Assembly: GCF_000315625.1 (NCBI RefSeq)
Contig: NW_005434638.1
Span: 313,300-377,299, forward strand
Length of the DNA stretch: 64,000 nt
From: Guillardia theta CCMP2712
Lineage: Eukaryota > Protista > Cryptophyta
Direction: 5' to 3'
Position 1 is the first letter of the stretch. Each line of letters begins with the position of its first letter. The translations under genes were made by a program, and so were the position numbers. Below, one piece after another: positions 18,895 through 37,900 of the stretch. Under the pieces are notes generated by a model. That model was not told where the DNA came from, ran no database searches, and saw nothing but the letters and a program-made list of their open reading frames with translations.

Positions 18895-20421
18895 TCATGC
18901 ATAGTAGCCGACCCCCGGGAACCACAACCTGCCATCGCAACTGAGTCACCAGGCACCACGAGGGCGTTAGGTGCTGCTCACTTGAGGCGGAAAGCATCTC
19001 CTCCGTTCAAGTAATATCGCAAAAGGCGCCTGAAACAGCAATGAAACAGTTGTTTCATATCACCTTCCTGGCACTCCCCTTCCCACCACTCACTTCCTCC
19101 TCCTCCTCCTCCTCCTCCTCCTCCTCCTCCTCCTCCTCCTCCTCCTCCTCTCACTTATCGCGAAAAAATCCCAGGTTCTCGTAAAGTCGAAGAGCACCAG
19201 TGTTGCTGCACTCGGTCTCCAGAACGACCTGACACCTAGTCAGGCTTGAATCTTACAGCACAAGCTCTCACCTCCTCGCATCCCTCCGCTCTCATCGAGC
19301 GTATCGCCTTCCCCACCAGGCACGTTCCGATCCCTTTCCCTCTCAGATCCGAGTCTACCGCCAGCATGGCGATGTATCCCCTGAAGTAGTCCCGATGCTG
19401 CCAGCATCGGTTGAGGGGAGGTCGGGGAGCAGGTGCCAAGTACCTGCTCGAGCTTGCAGACGACCACACCGCAGCATTTCCCGTTGTGCCTGTGAGAGAT
19501 GAGCGTCCATAGCAGGATGTTCAACGTCGCTCACATCGCCATGTGGGTGTGTTGAGGCCAGTTATAGATGAAGTATCGGTAGGTAAAGATGGAGTACGGC
19601 TCCGATAAATCCTTATCGATGAGAGCAACGATCTCTGCATGGAGATCATTCCCGAGGAAAGGAACGAAGATGCCTCACCTGCCATCTCCTCCTCCAGGGA
19701 AAAGGTCTTGTACGTGATACCTTCTTCAGTTCCTACCACACGTTAAGAACAGCCAGACAGGCCTCTCTGGACTCACCAGCTTCATGTGTTGGCAGAGGAA
19801 GGCGATTGTAAGTCGTCCGGTAAGTTTGCTCCTCGTCATACACACCCCGTTCCTGAGGTTCCTTGTCCTCGACTGAATGATGACCCGCGCTACCCCGCCC
19901 AGCTGCATGATTCATATGCCCCGAATCCCTGTCAGCGCAACTTCAAGGAAGGGTCGGAGCGACAAGCACGAGAGAACAAGTGATCGAAGGATAGAGAAGA
20001 AGGAATCGAAGGATAGAGAAGAAGGAATCGAAGGATAGAGAAGAAGGAATCGAAGGATATAGAACAAGTGATCGAAGGATAGAGGAGAAGGAATCGAAGG
20101 ATAGAGAAGAAGGAATCGAAGGATAGAGAACAGGTGATCGAAGGATAGAGAAGAAGGGATCGAAGGATAGAGAAACACGATTTAACATGTTGAAAGTCAA
20201 GATGATGATCCGAGAGATGCTCGAGATCAAGAGGAGGAACAGGAGGGGGATCCAGCAAGGGGACTAGACCTTCGGCCGTCCTCGGAGTTCTCGAGCTGCA
20301 GTCTCTCGACCTCCTTGTGAATCTTCTCCTCGAGCTTCGCCTGCGCTATCCTCCTCCTGATCGCCTCTCGCTTCCTCTCCCTCTCCTCCTCCTCCGCATT
20401 CTCAACTTGCCCGCGCTCCAT
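18895..20421 (-). CDS. NAA30: N-alpha-acetyltransferase 30 (NatC catalytic subunit, Mak3), multi-exon
   Basis: [98 protein letters not shown]. The first exon (20421-20270) splices in frame across a repeat-containing intron. Confidence 0.92.
19972..20175. repeat. ~22-bp minisatellite (~9 copies) in NAA30 intron 1
   Basis: Core ATCGAAGGATAGAGAA alternates with GAAGGA or CA(A/G)GTG. Confidence 0.9.
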
Positions 20422-20804: not shown

Positions 20805-20904
20805 NNNNNNNNNNNNNNNNNNNNNNNNNNNNNNNNNNNNNNNNNNNNNNNNNNNNNNNNNNNNNNNNNNNNNNNNNNNNNNNNNNNNNNNNNNNNNNNN
20901 NNNN
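20805..20904. other. Assembly gap (100 N)
   Basis: Run of N flanked by GGGA/GGAT repeats. Confidence 1.
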
Positions 20905-20994
20905 CTGTGAGGGAGGGAGGGAGGGAGGGATGGATGGATGGATGGATGGATGGATGGATGGAGGCTGTTCAGCTCTGGTGTGTCGTGTAGGATT

Positions 20995-23900
20995 TTATCT
21001 TGTAACGGGTACGAAGAAAGTTGCCCCCATCCTGATGTTCTCTTGCTCGATCCAAGACACGTTCCTCCTATCGTTCACACCCGCCCCCTCCCCTCCTTTC
21101 CTTGCGCTCCCATGGGTTTCTCTCAGTCCAGATGAAATTTGTTTCTGGGTAGCAGCAGCAGAGGGAGAAGAAGACGAAGACGAAGAAGAAGAAGCCTTAG
21201 TGGTTGACGGCATTGGCACGAATGGTCTTAAGAGACGGACAGCAACGTCATTTTCTGTTGAGATTGGAATAGTCAGTGAGGGAATGCAGAGGAACGAGTT
21301 GAAGAGAAGGAACCAGATAGGGGATAGAGGAAGAGGAAGGGATAGGGAACAAAGACGAGGAAGAGGAAGATTGTGAGGGAGGGGGGGAAGATCAAGGGAG
21401 GGAGGGGAAGTATGGAAGCAGCTGGCTCACCAACTCTCAGGGCGAGATCCATCGGCGTTTCTCCATCCTTGGTTGTTCGGTTGACGTCTGCGTTCGCCTG
21501 CAGCGAAGTTTGAGAGAGATGCGGGGAGGAGGGAGGAAGGGAGGCAGTCAGGGAGGGAGGGCAGGCAGGCAGGCAGGCAGGCAGGTAGCTTACCTGGGTT
21601 AATGATCGTATGATGAACTCAAGCTTCTTTTCCCATTCCTTGTCCTCTGCTCTATCACTTCAGCTCCCTGGAGTATCCAACAACCCCAAACGTCCTCTCA
21701 CCACATCCTGACGTTCGTAGACCCTCAGCACCGTCCACGCCCTGGCCCGAGACCTTCTCTAGCTCATTAGCCCTCTTATCATTCTCTTTCTCTCCTTCCT
21801 TCCCGCCCTCTCCCCCCTCATTCCTTTCTGGTCGCGCCATGGCGGCAAAGTGGAGGGCCTGGGTCAAGCTCAGTCATGTCAAGGCAGCAGTTCAGCTCGT
21901 CACCGTCCATCCCTGCACATCTTGGTCGTCGACAGAGATCAGCAGGCGCTCTCTCAGCTCGATCAGCTGGGAGAGGATGGCCGAGTACTCGCCCTCCTTC
22001 CCGTTCGAGCTCAGGTAGTTCTCTACCACCAGGGAGAGCACAGGGCACCAGCTGTTTCCCAGGCGCCGCTGCCGGGCAAGCTGCGGCTGCTTCCTGTTCC
22101 GCTCCCCTCCCTCGTGCAGCCCGGCTCCGTGCTCGAGGAGCAGCCGCATGACGCCTGGGTGGCCCATGGAGGCAGCGTAGGAGAGAGGCGTCCTGCCCCA
22201 GCGATCCTTCAGATTGACTTCAACTCCTCTGCTCAGAAGCGCTGCAGTCACTTCCTCTTGCCCGTGGAAGGAAGCATGATGTAGCAAGCTCCACTTGCTC
22301 AAGTCCCTGGCGTTCACGATCGACCGAGTCTCCTGCCCCGTGGCCGTCGCCTCCCCTGCGTCCAGCAGCTCAGACAGGATCTCTGCATGTCCTCCAGCTG
22401 CCGCAAGGTGAGCAGCGTTCAGGTGGGCGCCGTTGACGAGGGAGAGGGAGGCTCCCGCAGAGAGGAGGAGGCGGACGATAGGGAGGTTACCTCGGGCTAC
22501 AGCCCGCATGAGGGGGGAGGAGCCCTTGTTGAATCGGGTGATCGCTCCGTCGGGGCTCGCGCACAGGGACAGGAGGGAGGAGACAACTTCCTCTTGATTT
22601 CCTCCCACCGCCAGCTCCAGGGCAGCAGCCTCGCGCTTGAGGACGTCAGCTCTAACTGACATCTCGTCCTCCATCCTCGCCAGCATCTCCTCTGCTCCTT
22701 CCAGCCCCCCGCTGTCCTCCTCCACCCCGTGCCACTGCAGCAGGGAGCGCTTGCTCTGCGTGTTGAGGGTCGGGGAGTTGATGAAAGTCCACTGAAGGAA
22801 GAGGGCGAACTCCCGCAGCCTTGGCTTCCTGTGGAGGCCGCAAAGGCGAACTCTAGAGCGATCAGCAGGCGTGCTGAGGGAGGAGCTGGTTCCAACCAGC
22901 CTGGCGAACTCGACGCCGCTCAATCCCTGCTCCAACATCCCCAGCATTCTCACAGCTGAGACTGAGTTCCCTCCCATCTCGAAGAAGTTGGTCATCGGGC
23001 CCAGCGGCCCCTCCAGCTGCAGCACCTGACTCCAGATTTCCGAAACCAGCTCCTCCAGCTCGGTCCGCAGACTCTCCTCCCCTGCTTGTTGCCCTGCTTC
23101 CGTCCCGCTGGATTTTGCACCCTGCGCGGAGAGTGGGGGAGGAGGAGGGAGAGAGTTTCGATCTACTTTACCGTTAGAAGAGAGGGGCAAGCCTCCCTCC
23201 AGGAGGACGAACTGAGAAGGAACGTGGTACTGCGGCATGTACTTGAGGCAGAGCAGGCGGAGGCATACCTCCCCGCCGTGCTCCATCATCCTCCTCGCCG
23301 CCTCCCCTCTCTTCTCCCTCACGCTCAGGTACGCGACTAGCCGCTCGCTGCTCTCAGAGCCGACTTTCACCACCACCACCCCTTCCACGAAGGAGCAGCG
23401 GCTAATCACCGACTCGATCTCCTGCAGCTCGATCCGGAACCCCCTCAGCTTCACCTGGAAGTCTATCCTCCCCAGCACCTCAAGCTCGAGGTCCGAGTTC
23501 TTACCCCCTCCCCCTCTCCTCCTCCACCGCCCGACGTCTCCTGTGCGGAACCATCGGACTTGCTGATCATCCTCGAAGAACTTGGAACGGGTGAGCTCAT
23601 CTCGCCTCAGGTACCCACATGCTACTTGTACTCCACCTACCAAGATCTCCCCCTCGACGGCTCCTCCTTCCCCTTCATCCCCTTCCACCTTGACCAGCAC
23701 GTCCTTGAAGGGTCGGCCCACAACCTTGAACTCATCCTCTTCCCTCCCATCGCACACGTGCCATGTCTGATAAACCGTCGCCTCCGTCACCCCGTACGTG
23801 TTGATCAGACGCAAGGCTCTGGACCACTTGGCTACGATGCTCGCAGTCAGCGCCGCCCCCCCCAGGGCCAGCACCCTCAGGTGGGGAAGGTCAGCAGCAG

Positions 23901-24961
23901 ACACCGAGCCATCCAGCAGGCCCCACAGAGCTGGGGTAGTGCAGACATGGGTCACTCTACCCTGCACAAGCACGTCCAAGAGGCTGGTGGTGAGCGACGC
24001 GCGGGGGGCGATGCAGAGCAGAGCAGCTTGAGCGAGGGTCGAGAAGATGTCGCCAAGGGAAGGGTCCCACGTGATAGCAGCAGCCAGCAGCACGCGGGAG
24101 TTAGAGTCGATCTCGTGAGCAAGAGCTTTGCTCTGCATGTAGGCCAAGAGGCCCCTGCCCTCACCGTCGTCAGCTCATTCAACCTCCCCCGCCGTCTCAC
24201 CTGTGCTCGCAGACCACTCCCTTGGGCTCCCCCGTCGTACCAGACGTGTAGATGATGTGGCTTCTCAAGTGACTTACCTCCATGTCGTCTCCATCCACAC
24301 AGCTCTCCCGTCCAGTCTCAGCTCGCTGCTTCCCATCGGCATTTAGGAACTCCCGCAGGCCATCGCAACCTCCATCAACAGAGCCCTCCAGCACGTCCTC
24401 GACAACGACTAGCACGAGGGCTCGGGATGTTTTACCTCCTTCCTTCTTGGCGGAGGCTTCAACACGCTCACAGCTCTCGGCGATCACGAACACGTCCATC
24501 CCCTCCGACACGAGCTTGTTTCGGATCACTCGGCACGCTGCTCTCAGGACGAGAGCCACGCGCGCCGAAGAGTCTCGGAGGATGTAGGCGATGCGAGCAT
24601 CAGGCCACGTGGGATCGATGGGTACGAAGACAGAACGGCACTTGAGCACTGCTAGCTCGCTCATCACGATCTCCGGCCCCTCGTCCACCAGGATCGCCAC
24701 ATGCTGCTGGGCGGCCTCCGGCATATCCCAGCAGGACCTCACCAGCTCCAGCACTTCCCCCAGCAGCGAGGAGAGGACGTAACTATAGCGATTGACTTGA
24801 GCGTACGTAATGATGTGTCCCTCCTGATGACCGTCTCCTGACAGCCAAAGTATTGCTGCCTTGCTAGGGTTCAGCTCGGCCACTCGCTCCACAACCTGGT
24901 GAACCAGGACCTCGGAGCATTCCGGACCTCCCATGCCGTTTGGGCGTCGAGAGGAGTCCAA
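20995..24961 (-). CDS. NRPS-like protein: adenylation domain + peptidyl-carrier (T) domain + ankyrin repeats, multi-exon
   Basis: A3 IIYTSGTTGEPKGV; A4 TWDPSLGD; A5 NTYGVTEAT; A6 GEILVGGVQVACGYL; A7 FRTGD; A8 GRIDFQVKLRGFRIELQEIE; A10 LPLSSNGKVDR; PCP NFFEMGGNSVSAVRM; ANK repeats GSSPLMRAVARGN, NAAHLAAAGGH, SLLHHASFHGQ, GRTPLSYAASMGH, GWT|ALHFAA, GETPMDLA. Confidence 0.9.
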
Positions 24962-25965
24962 CGGAGCAGCAGAGGTGGTGGTGGTGGTGGGGTATTCTGA
25001 TCGCTCGCTCCTCCTACTGTCCTCCTACTGTCCTCCTACTGTCTTCCTATCCTCCCACTGCCCTCCTACTCTTCTCTCCCCTCCTCCTACTCTTCTCTCC
25101 CCTCCTCCTCCTCCTCCTCCTCCCCTGTCTGGTTGCCTGGGCAGTCCCTAGCGGGATTTGTCGCACATGCCCGACAACCGCAAACTTTGAAACTTTGAAA
25201 CTTTGAGGCCCTTGAAACTCCGAGAGTTTTGAGTCGCACCATGTTTCTTTCCGCCAGGGGTACTAATCATGTATTATTTGATATGTGTAGTTCGGAAGAT
25301 CATGAAATTGTTCAATAATATTTGAAAATTTTATGAAATTTATGAGCCCTGTTGGAGAACAAACATCCAAAATTAGATCAGTTAACATGGTCGTCGTGGC
25401 ATCTCGTGATGGCAGAGAGCGAAAGCACCGGGAGCATGCAGGGGGGGAGGCAGAGGGAGGGAGGACAAGGTTCTGGAGCATGTACAGGGAAGAGAGATGG
25501 CGACAGGCTGAGTACGAGTTGAGCCATCAAGGTTGTGTGGAGGAGGTGCAGAGGGTTTGAAGGAGTCATACGTCACAACAGGCTGGGTTTGATATGCGGG
25601 ATTCGCATGTAGGATTTGATTGGAGGAGTTGAGGAACCTAGTATGTCTCCATCTAGAGAGAGAAACCAAGACGATCAAACATCACTTTCCCGCTTCTTCT
25701 TCCATCCATGTGTGTGATCGCAAGTATGCAGTGTGATGATGTTGTCACAAAGAACTTTGGGGCTGGAACATACCATTGTTCCTTGCACCTCAAGAAAGCT
25801 GGAGCAGCAGTATTATAAATCAATGTATGAGACTGTGATGCGAAGAAATCACACTCGAGGAGAGGGATAGTTTGAAATTACATCGGGATGCTGCTGCAGC
25901 GCTTTCTGTCTATGTTGTACTGAACAGCACTGTGCAGCCTGGATCTCTGCTGCAAGAGTTTGAAT

Positions 25966-28915: not shown

Positions 28916-31900
28916 ATGGCTCCCAACTTTCATCCAGACGAGAGGTCTTATCAGTTCGCCAAGTGGACGACGGAAGAATGCCTTGAAGTCGGCATTGACT
29001 GGACAGACCCAGAGTCCCTGATCAACAAGAGGTCAATCCCAGTTACCTACTTCCTTGAGTACCCCGTGATCCCCAACATCAACCTCAAGAAACAAGCGGA
29101 GGATGAAGGAGTAGAGGGCTGCTGCGTCGACTACGACATCGAAGGCAGCGGGGTATGGGTACCTTGCCTGGTGCTCTCGGCGGCCAAGCTGTTCACTGTC
29201 ATAGTTGCGGGATACAACCATCCCACTCAAGTGCCTCGTCATCGCGTCCTCCTGCTCGACGAGAATCCTCGACTCTTTGCCAGAAGTCTGCACAAGGCGC
29301 TGAGGGAGCGGGAGCGAGCGGAGACGTTCTTGCGATACAACATCTACGCCGAGAATATGCCGACGTCAGACCTGCCTCCGATGGTGTGAACTTTCTCTGT
29401 CTCTCTGTCTCTCTCGCCCCTGCTGCCTCTCTCCCAGCCCACAAAGTCCCTCCCTCCCTCCCTCCCTCCCTCCCTCCCTCCCTCCCTCCCTCCTCTTCTG
29501 TCTGAAAGCCCCCTCCTAAAACTTATATGCTCTGTCAGACGCCATGGGAAATCTCCCGCATCACCAGCTCCGCGCTGAACTCAAAGACGCTTGCAAAGTT
29601 TGGAGAAGGAGGTAAGGGCAAGAGGCAGCTGTTCGTACATAATCACCTGCGTCCCTAACTTCCCCGGCAGGGATGACAAGCATGCTGCTGGACGAGGTCA
29701 GGACTGATCATGAGCTGACTCTAAATCAGATCGTCCTCAAGTCCGTCCTGCAAGACAAGAAGGACCAGAAGGATTTCTCCCTCCTCGACCTGACCTGCCT
29801 GGACATCAACACGCCCAAGGCACCGGCCCCGCAGACTGGAACCATCGTGGTGGAGCCGTACAGCTTCGCAAACGCGTTGAGAGAGTTCCAGGAGAAGACC
29901 CTGCTCTCGTTCAAGGAGGTCGTGCACGCCCTGTGCAACGTGCGATCGGAGTGCAGCAAGGTGTTGGAGCTGCAGCTGCTGGTCACTGAGTTCAAGTCCA
30001 GCGTTAGCCTCACCGAGTTCAAGCGCATCCAGACCGACACGGTCAAGTATGTCGTGCAGACCCTCAAGCGGAACTGGATCGACGGGATCCGCATCGGCAT
30101 CTCGACGCAGCTGGACGGGCTCAAGAACGAGCTGGACCTGGAGGTCAACGACAAGAAGAAGTTCGAAGAGAGCCCCCTCCCCATCCTTCTGCGCCAGGTG
30201 AGCGAAGCCTGCTGGAATCGTGCTTGGGTAGACTGACGTTGTGAGCAGGTGAGGTATGTCATGGAGCAGAGCCTTCGAGTGCTGGTGGAAGAGAGCGCCT
30301 CTGCCTACACCAAGTTCCTCTCGGATCTGACGGACATGGACGTGCAAGTACTGTCCACCGACTCCGTGACCATCAGGCACAACCAGCAGGAAGAGCACCT
30401 GCGGGAGAGAGACCCGTTCTTCCTCGTCGAGCTCAAGTTCGAGGACGGGATGTTCGTCTACACCACCAGCCCAGCTGACTTTGAGCGAGAGCCAGTCGAT
30501 CTCTTCATCGAAGCCCTTGTTGCAGTCTCCGACATCCCCCGCGCCGACTCCTACGTCCTCAAGAAGCTCTTCCTTGGTCGACTCATGTGTCTCTACTCGA
30601 TCGGGCCCGAGGAAGACCAGATGGTGAGGAGGATCGAGCTGATGAGGGAGCAGCTGCACAAGGTCTGCAGTCCCCTCACTGAGTACCTCCGGCTGTACGA
30701 CGAGTACCTCGAGTTCCTCAACATGGACCTGAGCGAGTACGTTCGCTCGCACGAGGAGAAGGGTTTGTCGCTGCAGGAGGACAAGGACGAGGTCAGACGA
30801 CTCAATGACGAGAAGGCTCGGATTACAGAGAGCATCCCTCCCTCCATCAGGATCGGTATCTTCCAGGTGGACTGTCAGAACGTCAAGCAGCAGCTGCAGA
30901 CCAAGTTCGACCTGCTCGTCAGAATGATTCTTTCCCTCATTGCGCAGAAGGTAAACCAATCATCCCAGTGTTACTCTCTCTTCCTCCTCCTCCTCCTCCT
31001 CCTCCTCTCTCTTCCTCCCGAAAACTCTTTTCTCCCATTGTCTTCCTCTTCGTCTCATGACTGTAAACGTTCTTCTTGCACTGACTTGTGCGGTGGAGGC
31101 GTCGGAGCTGAGCAAGAACATCGGCTCCAAGTTCACTGACATCCACAAGAAGTTGCTCCTGCATCCGGAGAGCGTCGAGCAGATCGTTGAGATGGAGGAG
31201 TACATCAAAGAGATCCCTAAAAAGACGGCAGAGATCCACATGGTTCTAGTCGACATGCTCTCACAGTTCGAAGTCCTCGAGAACTTCTCCTTCCAGCTCA
31301 GTGACGAGCAGTTCAGCGACAAGTGGTCGGCGTACGCCTGGCCAAAGACGCTGGAGCAGACGATCGGCGACGCCAGCCAGAAGATGGAGGAGAAGAGAGA
31401 TGCGTTCAAGAACGAGCAGATCGCTGAGCAGGAGGCGTTCGTGGACAAGCTCGACCAGATGGAGGCGATCATCGAGACCTACCACCAACACAACTCCCTC
31501 AGTAACATCGATACCATCGCCCCTGACGTCCGGGCCAAGGCGCAGACTCTCAAGGAGTACACGGAGTTGTCCAAGGTCTTCAATCAGCGAGAAGTCCTCT
31601 TCGGCCTCGAGCCGACCAACTACGAGCGGGTGCACAGGATGGGCAAACAGTTCGAGCCCTACACGCAGCTGTGGATCTCAACGGACGACTGGAGGACGTG
31701 GAAGCAGTCGTGGCTGGTGGACGACTTCACCTCCCTGCAGCCCGAGACCATGGACCAGGAGATCCAGGAGACCTGGAGAAACCTGCTCAAGGCCAGCAAG
31801 GCTCTTGCCGACTACCCCGAGTGTCAGAATATCGCTGACGAGATCCGGGCTGACATCGACGAGTTCAAGCCGCTCATGCCCGTCATCGCCTCCCTGCGCA

Positions 31901-34900
31901 ACCCCGGGCTCAAGGATCGTCACTGGGAGCAGATGTCAGCAGAGCTGGGATTCGAGCTGAAGCTGGGAAAGACGCTGAAGAACCTGCAGGACGTGATCGC
32001 CCTCGACCTGCATGCCCAGCAGGAGAAGATCGTCAAGATCTGCGAGACGGCGGCCAAGGAGTACTCGATCGAGGCGGCGCTCAACAAGATGCAGAACGAG
32101 TGGGAGCATGTGGAGTTCGAGATCATGCCGTACCGCGAGACCGGCTCCTTCGTGCTCAAGGGGTCGGACGATATCCAGCAGATGCTTGATGACAACATCG
32201 TCATGGCGCAGGCCATGAGCTTCTCCCCCTTCAAGAAGCCTCACGCCGAGAGGCTCGAAGCCTGGGCCCAGAAGCTCAACATGATGTCGGAGATTCTAGA
32301 GCAGTGGCTCAACTGCCAGAGGTCCGCTATTTGCTCTTCCTCCTTCTTCCTCCTTCCTCCTTCCTCCTTCCTCCTTCCTCCTTCCTCCTTCCTCCTTCCT
32401 CCTCTGACAGAGCTTGACCTCTGGTGGCAGGAATTGGATGTACCTAGAGCCAATCTTCAGCTCTGACGACATCATGAAGCAGCTGCCGTCGGAGGGTCAG
32501 AAGTTCAAGGCCTGCGACCGGCAGTGGAGAAAGTACATGAAGATGGCAGCCGATGACCCCAACGCCCTTCGCTTCACCGACACGCCTGACCTCCTCGGGA
32601 TTTTCATGCAGGCCTACCTCACGCTCGAGCAGGTACAGAAGGGTCTGTCGGACTACCTCGAGACCAAAAGGCAGGCGTTCGCTCGCTTCTACTTCCTCAG
32701 CAATGAGGAGCTGCTCGAGATCCTGTCACAGACTAAAGACCCGCGGGCAGTCCAGCCACACCTGCGCAAGTGCTTCGAGGCCGTGGACCGAGTCACGTTC
32801 GAGGAGGACCTGGCCATGACGTCCATGTGGTCGGGGGAGGGAGAGAACGTCGTGTGGGACGGGAAGGTGTACCCTGAGGGGAACGTGGAGTTCTGGCTGA
32901 CCGACGTCGAGAGGATGATGCGCATGTCCATCAACACGCAGGTAGGATACTCGGTGGAGGACTATGCCAAGGAGAGCCGCCCGGTGTGGGTCCTCAAGTG
33001 GCCGGGCCAGATCATCCTGGCGTGCGACCAGATCTACTGGACGAGGGAGACGGAGGAGGCGATCAAGAAGCTACAGCTGAAGGAGTACCACGAGCAGTGC
33101 CATCAGCAGCTCCTGGACGTGACGAAGCTCGTCAGGACTGATCTGAGCAAGATGCAGAGGGTCTCCCTCGGCGCCCTCGTGACCCTCGATGTCCATGGCA
33201 GAGACGTCGTGGAGAACCTGCACAAGGTTGGCGTCCAGTCCACCAGAGACTTCGAGTGGTCCGCCCAGCTGAGGTACTACTGGGAGAAGAGCTCGGAGGG
33301 ATTCAGCGGCGACTTTGGGAGCTTCGTGGTGCAGGTGGAGAACAGGTTCCGCTACGGCTGCGAGTACCTGGGGAACAGCATGAGGCTCGTCGTCACTCCC
33401 CTCACCGACAGGATCTACCTCACCCTTACCGGGGCCCTCGGCATGGCACTCGGCGGGGCTCCGGCAGGGCCAGCAGGGACCGGGAAGACGGAGACGACCA
33501 AGGACCTCGCCAAGGCGCTGGCGAAGCAGTGCATCGTGTTCAACTGCCAGGAGGGGATGGACTACATCATGGTGGGGAAGTTCTTCAAGGGGCTGGCCAT
33601 GTCCGGGGCATGGGCCTGCTTCGACGAGTTCAACAGGATCAACATCGAAGTGCTCTCCGTCATCGCCCAGCAGCTGCTCACCATCAACCAGGCCATCGTC
33701 AACAAGCTGGAGCGGTTCGTGTTCGAGGGGGTGGAGATCTCGCTGAACCCGGAGAACGCTTCCTTCATCACCATGAACCCGGGCTACGCGGGGAGGACCG
33801 AGCTGCCCGACAACCTCAAGGTTCTCTTCCGCCCAGTCGCCTGCATGGTCCCCAACTACGCTCTCATCGGGGAGATCCGCCTCTTCTCCTTCGGCTTCCA
33901 GGACCCGAGGAACCTGGCGGAGAAGATGGTGAATTGCTTCAAGCTCTCTTCAGAGCAGCTCTCCTCCCAGGACCACTATGACTTCGGCATGCGAGCAGTC
34001 AACACTGTCATCTCCGCCGCCGGGCTCAACAAACGCAGCCAGCCGGACGCAGACGAGGGCATCCTTATGCTCCGCGCGCTCAAGGACTCGAACCTGCCCA
34101 AGTTCCTGACGGACGATATCGTGCTCTTCAGCGGTATCATCTCGGATCTCTTCCCCGGCGTGAAGCTGCCGGATCCCGACTACGGCTCGTTGATGGAGCA
34201 GATGAAGTTGACTACAGCTGAGATGGGCCTGCAGTGTGTTCCTAACTTCATGACCAAGGCAATCCAGTTCTACGACGTCACCGTCCTCCGCCACGGACTC
34301 ATGACTGTCGGGCCCACCGGAGGAGGAAAGACTTGCTGCAAGAACATGCTGGCCAAGGCACTGACGATGCTCAAGAAGAATCAGGACGAGTACTACGAGG
34401 TCAGGCAGCTGATCATGAACCCCAAGTCCATCACCATGGGTCAGCTCTACGGCAGCTTCGACGAGGCTACTCACGAGTGGTCGGACGGCATCCTATGCAA
34501 GCTCTTCAGGGAGGCCGTCTACGACACCAGCGAGAAGCAGAAGTGGGTTGTCTTCGACGGGCCGGTTGACGCGCTCTGGATCGAGTCGATGAACACCGTG
34601 CTCGACGAGAACAAGAAGCTGTGCCTGGTCAGCGGGGAGATCATCACCATGACGTCATGGATGAGGATGGTGTTCGAGGTCGAGGACCTCTCCGTAGCCT
34701 CCCCCGCTACCGTCAGCCGCGTCGGCATCATCTACGTTGAGCCCAGCTCGTCCGTCGGCACTGCCGCCATGGTGACCTCCTGGCTCCAGACCCTCCCCGA
34801 GGCCGTCAGGCCGATGGAGAAGCAGCTCAAGACCCTGTTCGACCAGATGCTGGACGAGGCGCTGGACTTCCATCGAAGGAACCTGAGCAGCTTCGTCAAG

Positions 34901-37900
34901 ACGGTCGAGCCCAACCTGTGGCGTTCGGTGCTCAACGTGCTCGACGGCTTCCTCAAGGAGTACAACGTGATGGAGGGGCAGGCGGTGGACCCTGAGAGGC
35001 TGGAAGCTCTCAAGACCAACATCGAGCCGATCTTCCTCTTCTCCATCATCTGGGGCATCGGAGGGGCCCTGGACGCGCCGAGCAAGCTCAAGTTTGACCA
35101 GTGGATGAGGGGAAAGAAGAACTTCCCAGCCAAGAAGACCGTCTTCGACTACGCCTACGACACCCAGCAGTGCAAGTGGAAGGGATGGATGGAGACTATT
35201 GAGCAGGCTCCCATAGACCCCAGGAAGTCCTTCTCCGAGCTCATCGTTCAGACCCCCGAGTCCGTCAGCTACGCGTTCATGATCGAGCACATCTGCTCTC
35301 AGATGAAGCACGTCCTCTGCATCGGCCCCACGGGCACCGGCAAGACGCTGGTGGTAAAGCAGAAGCTGATGAAGGGGATGGACCCTTCGGTCTACAGCCC
35401 CATCTTCGTCACCTTCTCCGCTCAGACCACCGCCAACCAGACGCAGGACATCTTGGACGGCAAGTTTGACAAGCGGAGGAAGGGAGTGTTCGGCCCTCCC
35501 GCAGGGAAGAAGTTCACCATCTTTGTCGACGATACCAACATGCCTCTGAGGGAGCAGTACTTCGCCCAGCCCCCCATCGAGCTCCTGCGGCAGTGGATGG
35601 ACCATGGCGGCTGGTATGACAGGAAGACTCATCAGTTCTGCCAGATCATCGACGTCATGTTCGTAGGAGCCATGGGTCCCCCGGGAGGCGGGCGCCAACC
35701 CGTGACCAACAGGTTCCTCAGGCACTTCAACCATGTTTCCTTCCCCGACATGAACGACGACAGTTTGCGTCTTATCTTCCGAACCATCTTTGCTGCCCAC
35801 CTGGAGACCTTCTTTCCGCCCAAAATGAAGGCCCTCCTGGACCCGATCTGCGAGGCTTCGCTCGACCTCTACAACAACTGCCTCAAGTCGCTGCTGCCCA
35901 CCCCCGCCAAGTCGCACTACACCTTCAACCTGAGGGACCTGGCCAAGATTTTTCAGGGGATCATGATGGCAGATAGCAAGAAGATCGGGGAGGACGAGGG
36001 GATGGTTATCCGCCTTTGGGTCCATGAGTGCACTCGTATCCTCAGGGATCGCCTGACCGACACCCCGGACAGAGAATGGTTCGACGACCTCGTCGTTGAC
36101 TTGGTCAGCCTCTCCTGCTCCGCCCCCTCCTCCCCCCTTTCTATCTAAATTCTCCTCCTTCCTCATCATTGCTTTCTTTCTCCTCCCCTCCTCCTCCATC
36201 CCCCCACCCACCACCACCTCCTCCTCCTCCTCCTGTCTCCACCCCAGTTCCTCTTGCTCGTCCTCTTGCTCTTCTCCTCCCTCCCCCGCATCTAGATTCT
36301 CTTTCTACATCTCCCTCTCCCTCCACCATTGCTCCATTCTTCGGAGATCTTCTACTTGCCGTCCTCTCCTCTCCTCTACTTGTCGTGTCTCGTCGGTCTC
36401 TGCTCACCGTCTCCTTCCACAGGTCAAGACGACATTCACAAAAGATTGGTCGAAAATCAGAGTATGCGAGCGCTGCATCTGGGGTGAGACGACTTTGTCC
36501 TATCCTATCCTGTCCTGTCCTGTCCTGTCCTGTCCTGTCCTGTCCTGTCCTGTCCTGTCCTGTCCTGTCCTGTCCTGTCCTGTCCTGTCCTGTCCTTGTT
36601 GCTTTGCCCTCCCCTGCTTATTTCCGTCTCCTCTCCATTGCTTGCGTCTGCTCACTTCTTCCCTGCAGGAGACTACATGGTTCCTGGAGCTGATCCAAGG
36701 ATGTACGTCGAAGTTCAGGACCTCGCGCTGCTGAGGAGAACGATGGAAGGATATCTGGAAGAGTTCAACGTGTTGACCAACAAGCCCATGAAGCTGGTGA
36801 GAAGGATGGGAACTTGACTGAAATTATTCTCTCCTCTTCCGGGAATTTGACGGAAAAATTATCTCTATCTCAGTCGTATTTCATCATCATCATCATCATC
36901 ATCTCCTCCTCCTCCTCCTCCTCCTCCTCCTCCTCCTCCTCCTCCTCCTTCTATTACTCCCTCTACACCTCCTCGTCTCTCGCACATGTTGTCTTTAGCT
37001 CTCTTCCTCACATAAGTACAGGTTCTCTTTCTCGATGCCATCGAGCACGTGTCAAGGATCTCAAGGATTCTTCGTCAGCCTCGCAGCAACGCTCTGCTGT
37101 TGGGAGTGGGAGGAAGCGGCAGGCAGAGCTTAACTGTAAGAGAGGATCATGACGACGATACTCTTGCCCTTGCCCTTGCCCTTGCCCTTGCCCTTGCCCT
37201 TGCCCTTGCCCTTGCCCTTGCCCTTGCCCTTGCCCTTGCCCTTGCCCTTGCCCTTGCCCTTGCCCTCGCTCTCGCTCTCGCTCTCGCTCTCGCTCTCGCT
37301 CTCGCTCTCGCTCTCGCTGGTTCTCACGGTGTTCTCCAGCGAGTCGCAGCCTTCTGCGCGAGCATGGACTGCACTCAGATCGAGATCGCCAAGGGCTACG
37401 GGAAGAACGAGTGGAGGGAGGACATCAAGAAGATTTTGCTAAGGGCTGGAAAGGACGGAAAGCCAACGGTCTTCCTCTTCACAGACACTCAGATAGTGAT
37501 GGAATCATTCTTAGAGGTACCTCTTGCTCCTCCTCCTCCTCCTCCTCCTCCTCCTCCTCCTCCTCCTCTGTTCCTCTCCTCCTCCTTGACCCCCTAGTCC
37601 TTCCTCTCCTCCTCTCCTCCTCCTCCCTTCTACATCCCTCCTCGCCTGTTCTCATCCCTCCCTCAGGACCTCAACAACATCCTCAACTCAGGAGAAGTCC
37701 CCAACATCTTCGACATGGCGGATCAGGATCAGATCATGATGTCCATCCGATCCATCTGCCAGGCCGAAGGCATTCCCCTCACGAAGCAGAACATGTACGA
37801 AAGGTTCTTAGTCCGCATACAGGCCAACCTCCACCTCGTCCTCGCCTTCTCGCCCGTCGGCAACTCCTTCAGGAACAGACTGCGGCAGTTCCCCAGCCTC

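What the first reader, a model, noticed from the sequence alone, without database searches (positions are those of the whole stretch)
20995..24961. Stand-alone NRPS-like enzyme with adenylation-thiolation-ankyrin architecture
Seen: intact A-domain core motifs A3-A8 and A10 (including the catalytic Lys of NGKVDR), a carrier domain with the phosphopantetheine Ser (FFEMGGNS), then about six ankyrin repeats over several exons. There is no C, TE or R domain, and the gene is intron-bearing, so it is a resident nuclear gene. Known: single-module eukaryotic relatives end in a catalytic or propeller domain (Lys2 A-T-R, Ebony A-T-amine-selecting domain, AASDH/ACSF4 A-T-PQQ-like repeats). The TWDPS, VLALGG and NxYGxTE segments look AASDH-like to me. 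Inference: ankyrin repeats are non-catalytic protein binders, so the tethered aminoacyl/acyl group may be delivered to a docked partner protein or trans-acting enzyme. That would be an uncharacterised protein-modification or split-NRPS system in an alga.
Basis: partly seen in the sequence, partly recalled or inferred. Interest (0 to 1): 0.85.

Follow-up and report, generated by a model that had tools for sequence, protein, structure and literature searches.

The report
Stand-alone A-T-ankyrin NRPS-like enzyme
This is a real, expressed nuclear gene of the cryptophyte alga Guillardia theta that fuses an amino-acid-activating enzyme and its carrier domain to an ankyrin-repeat docking domain. It belongs to a small, uncharacterised family found in several distant groups of eukaryotes, all of which appear to activate the same unknown substrate.

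Summary
A six-exon minus-strand gene (CDS 24934 to 20995, five GT..AG introns of 46, 45, 55, 96 and 176 nt) encodes a 1173-aa protein. It holds a complete NRPS-type adenylation domain, a thiolation domain with Ser642, and about eight ankyrin repeats. No C, TE or R domain is present. One 3657-nt spliced RNA contig spans all three regions, and its junctions recur in two further studies.

The genome is Guillardia theta CCMP2712. The gene is not a one-off. About 28 proteins, with or without the ANK part recovered, form one A-domain clade (SH-aLRT 99) apart from 86 bacterial NRPS A domains. They come from Cymbomonas, a choanoflagellate, Tara picoeukaryotes, and two further G. theta paralogues.

All share a near-invariant specificity code, D-P-G-x-A-G-T-V-Y-K, that matched no bacterial code in the set. 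They also share conserved Arg/Trp residues on the canonical ankyrin binding face. This points to one conserved substrate and one conserved ligand or partner.

Delivery of the tethered group to an ANK-docked partner is the best mechanism, but it is inferred. The AASDH likeness could not be tested. No characterisation was found in the literature. I class it as a new variant of a known kind, of moderate to high interest.

The parts
20960..25088 (-). Transcribed region seen in RNA contigs. The 5' UTR reaches at least 25088. The 3' end is not defined because of an assembly gap at about 20843-20906.
   Evidence: X1 record 1 (3657 nt) covers 21049-25088 with the introns removed, and X2 record 3 reaches 20960.
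24201..24934 (-). CDS exon 1: Met1 (ATG 24934-24932) to the first two bases of codon 245. It holds the N-terminal half of the A domain, motifs A1-A3.
   Evidence: AMP-binding scores 85 bits. The first in-frame ATG follows an upstream stop.
24155..24200 (-). Intron 1, 46 nt, GT..AG.
   Evidence: joint 24153/24200 in X1, X2 and X3. Sequence read.
21904..24154 (-). CDS exon 2, residues 245-995. It holds A4-A10, the T domain, a linker and ankyrin repeats up to the GWT of the seventh repeat.
24064..24066 (-). Asp275, equivalent to GrsA Asp235, the ligand of the substrate amino group. It is the first residue of the family code D-P-G-x-A-G-T-V-Y-K.
   Evidence: The column mapping was validated by recovery of the classic bacterial codes DASTVAAVCK, DVWHVSLVDK, DFWNIGMVHK and DILQLGMVWK.
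23167..23169 (-). Lys574, the A10 catalytic lysine (equivalent to GrsA Lys517).
   Evidence: It is conserved in all full-length family members.
22789..23067 (-). Thiolation (PCP) domain, residues about 608-700. It includes the conserved basic stretch LCGLHRKPRLR before the last helix.
   Evidence: PP-binding 31 bits; alignment; helices at ORF residues 363-375, 395-411, 427-440 and 444-455.
22963..22965 (-). Ser642 (GGNS), the predicted phosphopantetheine attachment site.
   Evidence: and where it is an invariant column (S395 in ORF numbering).
21217..22626 (-). Ankyrin-repeat region, residues about 755-1100, spread over exons 2-6. There are about eight repeats, and repeats 5 and 6 carry long inserts.
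   Evidence: (Ank families). The later repeats GWTALHFAA and DGETPMDLALRV were read directly from the spliced sequence.
22192..22203 (-). Arg896-Trp897-Gly898-Arg899 of the hallmark repeat D-R-W-x-R-T-P-L. These are conserved residues at the canonical target-binding positions of an ankyrin repeat.
   Evidence: (D648 and W650 invariant in ORF numbering), and (the own C7 paralogue has DKWNRQPLHWA).
21859..21903 (-). Intron 2, 45 nt, GT..AG. It removes the TGA that ends ORF 21892-24147.
   Evidence: joint in X1 and X3. X2's loose end at 21859 reads the spliced form.
21702..21858 (-). CDS exon 3, residues 996-1048 (partial codon). It continues repeat 7 and holds an acidic, Gly-rich insert.
21647..21701 (-). 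Intron 3, 55 nt, GT..AG.
   Evidence: joint in X1, X2 and X3.
21594..21646 (-). CDS exon 4.
21498..21593 (-). Intron 4, 96 nt, GT..AG, rich in CT repeats.
   Evidence: table 8. X1 record 1 jumps from 21597 to 21500 with three ambiguous bases. The row was dropped from the joints table because it lies at a repeat. Boundaries were checked.
21431..21497 (-). CDS exon 5 (the last ankyrin repeat begins here).
21255..21430 (-). Intron 5, 176 nt, GT..AG.
   Evidence: joint in X1, X2 and X3.
20995..21254 (-). CDS exon 6: the end of the last repeat, a Ser-rich low-complexity tail, and stop TAA at 20997-20995.

Best explanation
The locus is an expressed nuclear gene of Guillardia theta. It encodes a 1173-aa stand-alone NRPS-like loading module fused to an ankyrin solenoid.

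Shown here:
- The A domain has all core motifs, including the Asp that binds a substrate amino group and the catalytic A10 Lys.
- The T domain has its Ser.
- The predicted A-T part superposes best on NRPS modules caught in the thioester-forming state.
- The genome encodes a phosphopantetheinyl transferase.
- There is no cis release domain.
- The protein belongs to a monophyletic eukaryotic family whose specificity code (D-P-G-x-A-G-T-V-Y-K) and ankyrin binding-face residues (D-R-W-x-R-T-P-L, N-K-W, P-Q-x-A-H-x-x-R-x4-W) are conserved from cryptophytes to green algae and a choanoflagellate.

Inferred mechanism:
- The enzyme adenylates one particular amino-group-bearing acid, the same in all members and of unknown identity.
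- It thioesterifies that acid onto the Ppant arm of Ser642.
- The ankyrin face holds a conserved partner or ligand, so the tethered group is handed on in trans. The recipient could be an acceptor bound to the ANK domain or an enzyme docked there.
- Conservation of substrate and binding face across such distant lineages argues for a cell-biological or primary-metabolic role, not lineage-specific secondary metabolism.
For: - Domains and motifs.
- Single spliced transcript with identical junctions in three studies.
- Family members with the same architecture. Atlas clusters named 'Ligase/ankyrin repeat fused protein', with 66 and 60 members, all eukaryotic.
- A-domain tree: a 28-row clade at SH-aLRT 99, separate from 86 bacterial A domains (99).
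- Near-invariant code in all clade members, including the own C7 and C8 paralogues. The best bacterial match is 5 of 10, and the mapping is validated by recovery of textbook codes.
- Conserved Arg/Trp at ankyrin positions known as target-binding (positions 2, 3, 5, 13 of the DARPin consensus; established knowledge).
- AF2 model at pLDDT 80 and pTM 0.71. The best low-rmsd matches are EntF thioester-forming 5t3d, LgrA thiolation-state 5es8 and holo-PA1221 4dg9.
- A PPTase (PF01648) in the genome.
- No Condensation hit above cut-off in the genome.
Against: - No partner, acceptor or product is known.
- The substrate is unidentified.
- Ankyrin repeats could serve only for localisation.
- Ser642 loading is untested, and the motif is GGNS where GGDS or GGHS is usual.
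- The tree has no eukaryotic outgroup (AASDH, Ebony, Lys2), so the family's origin is open.
- The family is small in the databases, with about 22 clusters at 90% identity plus fragments. Several members come from metagenome gene calls whose ends may be wrong.
Confidence: 0.5

Rival explanations
1. Ebony-like small-molecule amide synthetase. The loaded acid is released by direct attack of a small amine or other nucleophile held on the Arg/Trp-rich ankyrin face. The ANK domain would then play the part of Ebony's amine-selecting domain, and the product would be a small conjugate, not a modified macromolecule.
For: - The architecture is A-T plus a non-C C-terminal domain, as in Ebony (PMC10531068).
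- Conserved Trp and Arg on the binding face could form a pocket for a small charged or aromatic ligand. Ankyrin domains that bind small ligands are known, for example RNase L with 2-5A (my knowledge, not tested here).
- The invariant code fits a single conserved metabolite.
Against: - Ankyrin repeats have no known catalytic role in acyl transfer.
- No catalytic His or Cys motif is conserved in the ANK region.
- Homologues carry macromolecule-binding tails (SAP, LOTUS, zinc knuckles), which fit a macromolecular context better.
Confidence: 0.2
2. The ankyrin repeats only localise or scaffold the enzyme (membrane, cytoskeleton or ribonucleoprotein particle). The A-T part works like any stand-alone loading module for a separately encoded enzyme that recognises the T domain itself.
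For: - Ankyrin repeats are generic interaction modules.
- In dinoflagellates, single NRPS/PKS domains are often fused to ankyrin, HEAT or PPR repeats (PMC6361889).
- Subfamily 1 has a conserved basic patch on the T domain (LCGLHRKPRLR) that could itself be the docking site.
- The genome has a stand-alone HHxxxDG acyltransferase, G000:C80:323252-324658.
Against: - The ANK binding-face residues are conserved across both subfamilies and across very distant lineages. That is more than a generic anchor needs.
- No link between the C80 protein and this gene was found.
Confidence: 0.15
3. It is an AASDH/ACSF4-U26 derivative. The A-T part is orthologous to the beta-alanine-activating enzyme, and the PQQ-like propeller has been swapped for ankyrin repeats, so the substrate is beta-alanine.
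For: - My own memory of the human sequence agrees for the DPS and ALGGE segments, but that is a lead and not a test.
- Both are stand-alone eukaryotic A-T proteins with a repeat domain.
Against: - The defining propeller (PF13570) is absent.
- No propeller-bearing cluster is among the 100 nearest Atlas clusters.
- Bacterial NRPS modules rank next after the family.
- G. theta has an ACSF4-type propeller only as a stand-alone protein on another contig.
- No AASDH sequence could be fetched, so the phylogeny was not run.
Confidence: 0.1
4. Artefact: a chimeric gene model, a bacterial contaminant or a pseudogene.
For: - The A domain is most like bacterial NRPS outside its own family.
- An assembly gap lies just downstream.
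Against: - Five spliceosomal introns are removed in RNA contigs from three studies, and one contig covers A, T and ANK.
- The spliced frame is intact at 1173 aa.
- The neighbours are eukaryotic genes.
- Homologues have the same architecture.
Confidence: 0.02

Closest known systems
AASDH / ACSF4-U26 (vertebrate beta-alanine-activating enzyme, A-T-PQQ-like propeller)
   Same: It is a stand-alone eukaryotic NRPS-like A-T didomain followed by a non-catalytic repeat domain. Its physiological acceptor is also unknown, and post-translational modification has been proposed (PMC10531068).
   Different: The C-terminal domain here is an ankyrin solenoid, not the PF13570 beta-propeller. Orthology of the A domains is untested. 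The substrate is unknown.
Ebony (insect beta-alanyl-amine synthase, A-T plus amine-selecting domain)
   Same: It is a single A-T module whose thioester is released by a C-terminal domain that is not a canonical condensation domain.
   Different: Ebony's C-terminal domain is a catalytic acyltransferase-like fold. Ankyrin repeats are not known to catalyse transfer.
Bacterial NRPS A-PCP didomains (LgrA, EntF, PA1221, DhbF)
   Same: These are the best sequence and structure matches for the A-T part. They share the same core motifs and the predicted thioester-forming arrangement.
   Different: The window protein has no C, TE, E or MbtH context and is an intron-bearing nuclear gene. Its specificity code is not seen in the bacterial set. 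It forms a separate clade.
A-T-R / A-T-R1-R2 reductases (Lys2, fungal ATRR, diatom PtNRPS1)
   Same: They are stand-alone eukaryotic A-T loading modules. G. theta has one of its own at G000:C101.
   Different: Those release the product through a reductase domain, which is absent here. The own A-T-R-KR protein is much more distant (44 bits over part of the A domain).
Dinoflagellate single NRPS/PKS domains fused to ankyrin, HEAT or PPR repeats (PMC6361889)
   Same: A biosynthetic-type domain is fused to protein-interaction repeats in a protist, and these too are catalogued but uncharacterised.
   Different: That paper describes fusions in general. No A-T-ANK family, code or conserved ANK face is defined there, and I did not test whether those proteins belong to this clade.
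ACBD6 (acyl-CoA-binding domain plus ankyrin repeats that dock N-myristoyltransferase)
   Same: Functional analogy only, from my knowledge: a carrier of an activated acyl group fused to ankyrin repeats that bind the transferase using it.
   Different: It is unrelated in sequence. It binds acyl-CoA non-covalently and has no adenylation or Ppant chemistry.

Membership tests
NRPS-type adenylation domain (ANL superfamily, amino-acid-activating branch) | Pfam AMP-binding above the gathering score and core motifs A1-A10 | tested here: met
   (85 and 84 bits, cut-off 29.9). Motifs read.
NRPS-type adenylation domain (ANL superfamily, amino-acid-activating branch) | Asp at GrsA position 235 and Lys at position 517 | tested here: met
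   Asp275 and Lys574. The mapping was validated by recovery of textbook codes in bacterial rows.
NRPS-type adenylation domain (ANL superfamily, amino-acid-activating branch) | Measured adenylation of a defined substrate | not testable with these tools
   Needs an ATP-PPi exchange or hydroxamate assay.
Peptidyl carrier (thiolation) domain | PP-binding above cut-off, GGxS serine, four-helix bundle | tested here: met
   (31 bits, cut-off 20.8). Ser642 is invariant in the family. Helices in the AF2 model.
Peptidyl carrier (thiolation) domain | Phosphopantetheinylation by a PPTase | tested here: inconclusive
   A PPTase gene (PF01648, 39 bits) exists at G000:C13:862086-862316. Modification itself is not testable here.
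Canonical NRPS elongation or termination module | Condensation domain and/or a TE or R release domain in cis | tested here: not met
   No such Pfam hit in any exon. The linker between T and ANK is low-confidence and unconserved.
AASDH / ACSF4-U26 | C-terminal PQQ-like beta-propeller (PF13570) | tested here: not met
   The genome's PF13570 protein is a separate gene on contig C49.
AASDH / ACSF4-U26 | A domain orthologous to AASDH; beta-alanine activation | not tested
   No AASDH sequence could be obtained (one search returned only propeller proteins). Phylogeny and assay are still needed.
Ebony | C-terminal amine-selecting acyltransferase-like domain | tested here: not met
   The C-terminal region is ankyrin repeats only.
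Lys2 / ATRR / CAR reductases | NAD_binding_4 reductase domain after T | tested here: not met
   By contrast the own C101 gene has it.
Eukaryotic A-T-ANK family (Atlas name 'Ligase/ankyrin repeat fused protein') | AMP-binding + PP-binding + Ank on one chain | tested here: met
   Nearest Atlas clusters score 0.92 and 0.90.
Eukaryotic A-T-ANK family (Atlas name 'Ligase/ankyrin repeat fused protein') | A domain inside the family clade | tested here: met
   A 28-row clade at SH-aLRT 99, with the window protein in a 22-row subclade at 96.
Eukaryotic A-T-ANK family (Atlas name 'Ligase/ankyrin repeat fused protein') | Code D-P-G-x-A-G-T-V-Y-K and hallmark repeat D-x-W-x-R-T-P-L | tested here: met

The most novel reading that the evidence does not exclude
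The A-T-ANK proteins are an unrecognised, ancient eukaryotic system. It would attach one specific non-ribosomally activated amino acid to a macromolecular target (a protein, or an RNA or ribonucleoprotein component) that is recognised by the conserved Arg/Trp face of the ankyrin domain. This would be a post-translational or post-transcriptional aminoacylation independent of tRNA and ubiquitin-like chemistry. The recurrent nucleic-acid or chromatin-type tails in homologues would point to where it acts: SAP, OST-HTH/LOTUS, CCHC zinc knuckles, and DnaJ plus a CSL zinc finger.
Probability: 0.15. Interest if true: 0.85.

Novelty: new variant of a known kind. Interest (0 to 1): 0.6.

Why it matters
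Stand-alone eukaryotic A-T enzymes are few. The known ones are Lys2, Ebony, AASDH, ATRR and PtNRPS1. Each one that has been solved revealed unexpected primary or signalling chemistry, and AASDH's acceptor is still unknown.

This family has a substrate code that is frozen across cryptophytes, green algae, a choanoflagellate and marine picoeukaryotes. It also has a conserved ankyrin binding face, and it has no release domain. That combination makes a clear, testable case for trans delivery of a carrier-tethered group by docking.

Identifying the substrate and the ANK ligand would define a new output route for NRPS-type chemistry in eukaryotes. It might also shed light on what AASDH-type enzymes do.

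Tried and rejected
- **Exhaustive representative search.** The best 150 were all giant multi-module bacterial NRPSs, because bit scores sum over modules. It was useless for sizing the family.
- **Fetching AASDH through the genome's own ACSF4-type propeller protein.** It returned only stand-alone PQQ-like propellers. It did reveal the organism, but gave no AASDH, so the A-domain tree has no AASDH, Ebony or Lys2.
- **Drozak et al. 2014.** The paper is not held.
- **Complex prediction of the T-ANK part (ORF residues 355-751) with the genome's only HHxxxDG condensation-like protein, G000:C80.** The result was no verdict (score 0.00, controls not run). This is not evidence for or against binding.
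- **Raw-read RNA run X17.** Only one read was laid from about 6% of the run, so it is uninformative.
- **The search of earlier findings by place and by words.** Nothing relevant.
- **Substrate prediction from the code.** There was no match better than 5 of 10 to any bacterial code in the set. I could not assign a substrate and do not guess one.
- **N-terminal MGGPECS.** It fits the generic N-myristoylation pattern, but it is not conserved in homologues, so I dropped it.
- **Paralogue on C8.** Its A domain carries the family code, but assembly gaps hide whatever follows, so its architecture is unresolved.
- **Model coordinates.** They are not exposed, so I could not measure whether the conserved Trp and Arg residues cluster in space. 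Their placement rests on ankyrin consensus positions.


Full report
**What is in the sequence**

The interval holds two large minus-strand ORFs, 24197-24961 and 21892-24147. Pfam places the first half of an AMP-binding domain in the upstream ORF at 85 bits. In the downstream ORF it places the second half (84 bits), a weak AMP-binding_C, PP-binding (31 bits, cut-off 20.8) and several ankyrin families. No condensation, thioesterase or reductase family is hit.

**Gene model and expression**

I laid the contigs of three runs from three studies on 20960-25300. The same skips appear, and every one reads CT..AC on the plus strand, which is GT..AG on the minus strand. The junction pairs are 24153/24200, 21857/21903, 21646/21702 and 21254/21431. 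A fifth jump, 21500/21597, is visible in the pieces of X1 record 1.

That record is 3657 nt long. It runs from 25088 to 21049 with all five introns removed, so the A, T and ANK parts lie on one RNA.

Splicing the exons gives one open frame of 1173 residues.
- It starts at ATG 24934-24932.
- It ends at TAA 20997-20995.
- The introns are 46, 45, 55, 96 and 176 nt.
- The stop that closes ORF 21892-24147 lies inside the 45-nt intron 2.
- The last ankyrin repeats are encoded by exons 3 to 6.

The neighbouring genes are ordinary nuclear genes: a GNAT acetyltransferase, eIF2B, a GST, a CRAL-TRIO protein and a dynein heavy chain. There is no biosynthetic cluster.

**Organism**

The assembly has 87.1 Mb in 669 contigs. 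A protein on its contig C49 is identical to GUITHDRAFT_140903 of Guillardia theta CCMP2712, on a contig of the same length. The host is therefore a cryptophyte alga.

**Integrity of the catalytic parts**

All ten A-domain core motifs are present. I aligned the protein to LgrA and to 113 other A domains to read the ten specificity positions.

The mapping is sound, because the same columns give textbook codes in the bacterial rows: DASTVAAVCK, DVWHVSLVDK, DFWNIGMVHK and DILQLGMVWK. The window protein reads D-P-G-C-A-G-T-V-Y-K. The amino-group-binding Asp (Asp275) and the A10 Lys (Lys574) are both in place.

The carrier serine, Ser642 in FFEMGGNS, is an invariant column of the family alignment.

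An AlphaFold2 model of the 751-residue ORF has pLDDT 80 and pTM 0.71. It shows the A core, the A subdomain, a four-helix T domain and an ankyrin solenoid. Foldseek's best low-rmsd matches are NRPS modules in the thioester-forming state: EntF 5t3d, LgrA 5es8 and holo-PA1221 4dg9.

The genome also encodes a phosphopantetheinyl transferase.

**The family**

The word-indexed search found about twenty proteins of 733-1281 residues with the same AMP-binding, PP-binding and Ank composition. The best is a hypothetical protein of the prasinophyte Cymbomonas tetramitiformis, at 45% identity. After these come bacterial C-A-T modules at 33-37% identity.

A profile search added two longer members. One of their clusters contains a EukProt protein of the choanoflagellate Bicosta minor. 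Another cluster comes from Tara Oceans picoplankton contigs, where the gene lies next to a ribosomal protein gene. The ESM Atlas holds two eukaryotic clusters of 66 and 60 members, automatically named 'Ligase/ankyrin repeat fused protein'.

The tree of 114 A domains shows the following.
- All A-T-ANK proteins form one clade with SH-aLRT 99.
- Six short A or A-T fragments that I had first labelled bacterial fall in the same clade.
- The 86 bacterial NRPS domains form a separate clade, also at 99.
- The window protein sits in a 22-row subfamily (96).
- A second G. theta gene on contig C7 groups with the other subfamily. It also has ankyrin exons after its T domain.
- A third G. theta A domain on C8 carries the same code, but assembly gaps hide its continuation.

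**Two conserved signatures**

1. The specificity code is almost invariant through the whole clade, in both subfamilies and all lineages. Only the fourth position varies freely (C, L, F, T or V). No bacterial row shares more than five of the ten positions, and that count includes the trivial Asp and Lys. The family therefore very probably activates one and the same substrate, which I cannot name.

2. The ankyrin region is not generic. The conserved residues in the window protein are:
   - Arg861-Asp862 and Trp866;
   - Asp895-Arg896-Trp897 and Arg899;
   - Pro934-Gln935, Arg941 and Trp947.

   The motif D-x-W-x-R-T-P-L-x-W-A recurs in both subfamilies, including the C7 paralogue. Measured against the ankyrin consensus, these Arg and Trp residues fall at positions 2, 3, 5 and 13. 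Those are the positions that form the target-binding face and are randomised in designed ankyrin binders (established knowledge, not computed here). This argues for one conserved ligand or partner.

Subfamily 1 also has a conserved basic stretch, L-C-G-L-H-R-K-P-R-L-R, before the last T-domain helix.

**Accessory domains in homologues**

All of the following score above the Pfam cut-offs.
- A C-terminal SAP domain in P0349.
- OST-HTH/LOTUS in P0350.
- A CCHC zinc knuckle in P0008, with similar Cys/His knuckles in the tails of the Cymbomonas protein and P0002.
- An N-terminal DnaJ plus CSL zinc finger in P0098.

The window protein has only a Ser-rich tail. These tails hint at a nucleic-acid or ribonucleoprotein setting. 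Some may be gene-call fusions, however, and I treat this as a lead only.

**Mechanism**

The shown steps are a competent-looking A-T loading module without any cis release domain, and an ankyrin face under family-wide constraint.

The inferred steps are as follows.
1. The A domain adenylates an amino-group-bearing acid.
2. The acid is transferred to the Ppant arm of Ser642.
3. The ankyrin domain holds a partner or acceptor that takes the tethered group.

The rivals are:
- an Ebony-like small-molecule conjugation on the ankyrin face;
- a pure localisation role for the repeats, with a separate enzyme recognising the T domain;
- an AASDH-derived beta-alanine enzyme.

The genome has no condensation domain above the Pfam cut-off. 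It does have one stand-alone 468-residue protein with an HHVLGDG motif, at 28.6 bits against a cut-off of 30.6. Nothing links that protein to this gene.

**Comparison with the known**

The A-T part works like a bacterial A-PCP didomain and like the stand-alone eukaryotic modules AASDH, Ebony, Lys2 and ATRR. It fails the defining C-terminal feature of each of those families.

G. theta has its own A-T-R-KR protein on C101, which is much more distant. It also has an ACSF4-type propeller as a separate gene.

The rankings give it no support.

The literature held here notes only that dinoflagellate single NRPS/PKS domains are often fused to ankyrin, HEAT or PPR repeats (PMC6361889). It also notes that ACSF4-U26 may act in post-translational modification (PMC10531068). 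Four further searches found no study of an A-T-ANK protein.

**Verdict**

The thing is a member of a conserved but uncharacterised eukaryotic A-T-ANK family, which is already visible in databases as hypothetical proteins.

I class it as a new variant of a known kind, a stand-alone NRPS-like loading enzyme. Interest is 0.6, because the frozen substrate code and the conserved docking face make a specific new chemistry directly testable.

No earlier finding of the scan bore on this gene.

Noticed in passing
G000:C7:1143163-1146000 (L011 6269-7783 +; L022 1271-1969 +): A second A-T-ANK gene lies in the same genome and belongs to the other subfamily. Its code is DPGCAGVVYK, its carrier motif is the canonical GGDS, and it has ankyrin exons including DKWNRQPLHWA.
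   Followed up: partly
G000:C8:182603-183502 (L012 6460-7689 -): A third A domain carries the family code (DPGLAGVVY). Runs of N downstream hide whether T and ANK follow.
   Followed up: partly
G000:C101:180415-184583 (L013 4415-8583 -): This is an A-T-R-KR gene (AMP-binding, PP-binding, NAD_binding_4, adh_short). The architecture matches fungal ATRR and diatom PtNRPS1 (A-T-R1-R2).
   Followed up: no
G000:C49:536450-539662 (L020 451-3663 -): A stand-alone protein of about 1050 aa (GUITHDRAFT_140903) has the ACSF4-type beta-propeller (PF13570, 227 bits) but no A-T part next to it. Its nearest relatives are bacterial and archaeal PQQ-like propeller proteins.
   Followed up: partly
G000:C80:323252-324658 (L026 2252-3658 +): A single-exon ORF of 468 aa has an HHVLGDG motif and sub-threshold matches to the Condensation and BAHD Transferase families. 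It is the only condensation-like candidate found in the genome.
   Followed up: partly
window 20843-20906: A run of N (assembly gap) lies about 90 nt downstream of the stop codon, so the 3' UTR and polyadenylation site of the gene are not in the assembly.
   Followed up: no
window 20907-20990, 21523-21596, 25020-25130: Short-unit simple repeats (CCAT/CCCT, CTGC, GGAGGA/GGACAGTAGGAG units) lie in the 3' flank, intron 4 and the 5' UTR. The reads tool skipped them as repeats.
   Followed up: no
window 21859-21903 and 24155-24200: These are very short spliceosomal introns of 45-46 nt. Retention of intron 2 would restore an in-frame TGA and truncate the last ankyrin repeats.
   Followed up: no
window 19236-19739 (-): A GNAT-type N-acetyltransferase gene in several exons lies immediately downstream on the same strand (Acetyltransf_1, 39 bits). 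Nothing links it to the A-T-ANK gene.
   Followed up: no
window 31057-36148 (+): Part of a dynein heavy chain gene (DHC_N2, AAA_6, AAA_7, AAA lid domains).
   Followed up: no
P0007, P0010, P0012, P0014, P0015 C-terminal tails: Several picoeukaryote family members end in repeated short W-x-W-P-P motifs, where others carry zinc knuckles. Their function is unknown.
   Followed up: no
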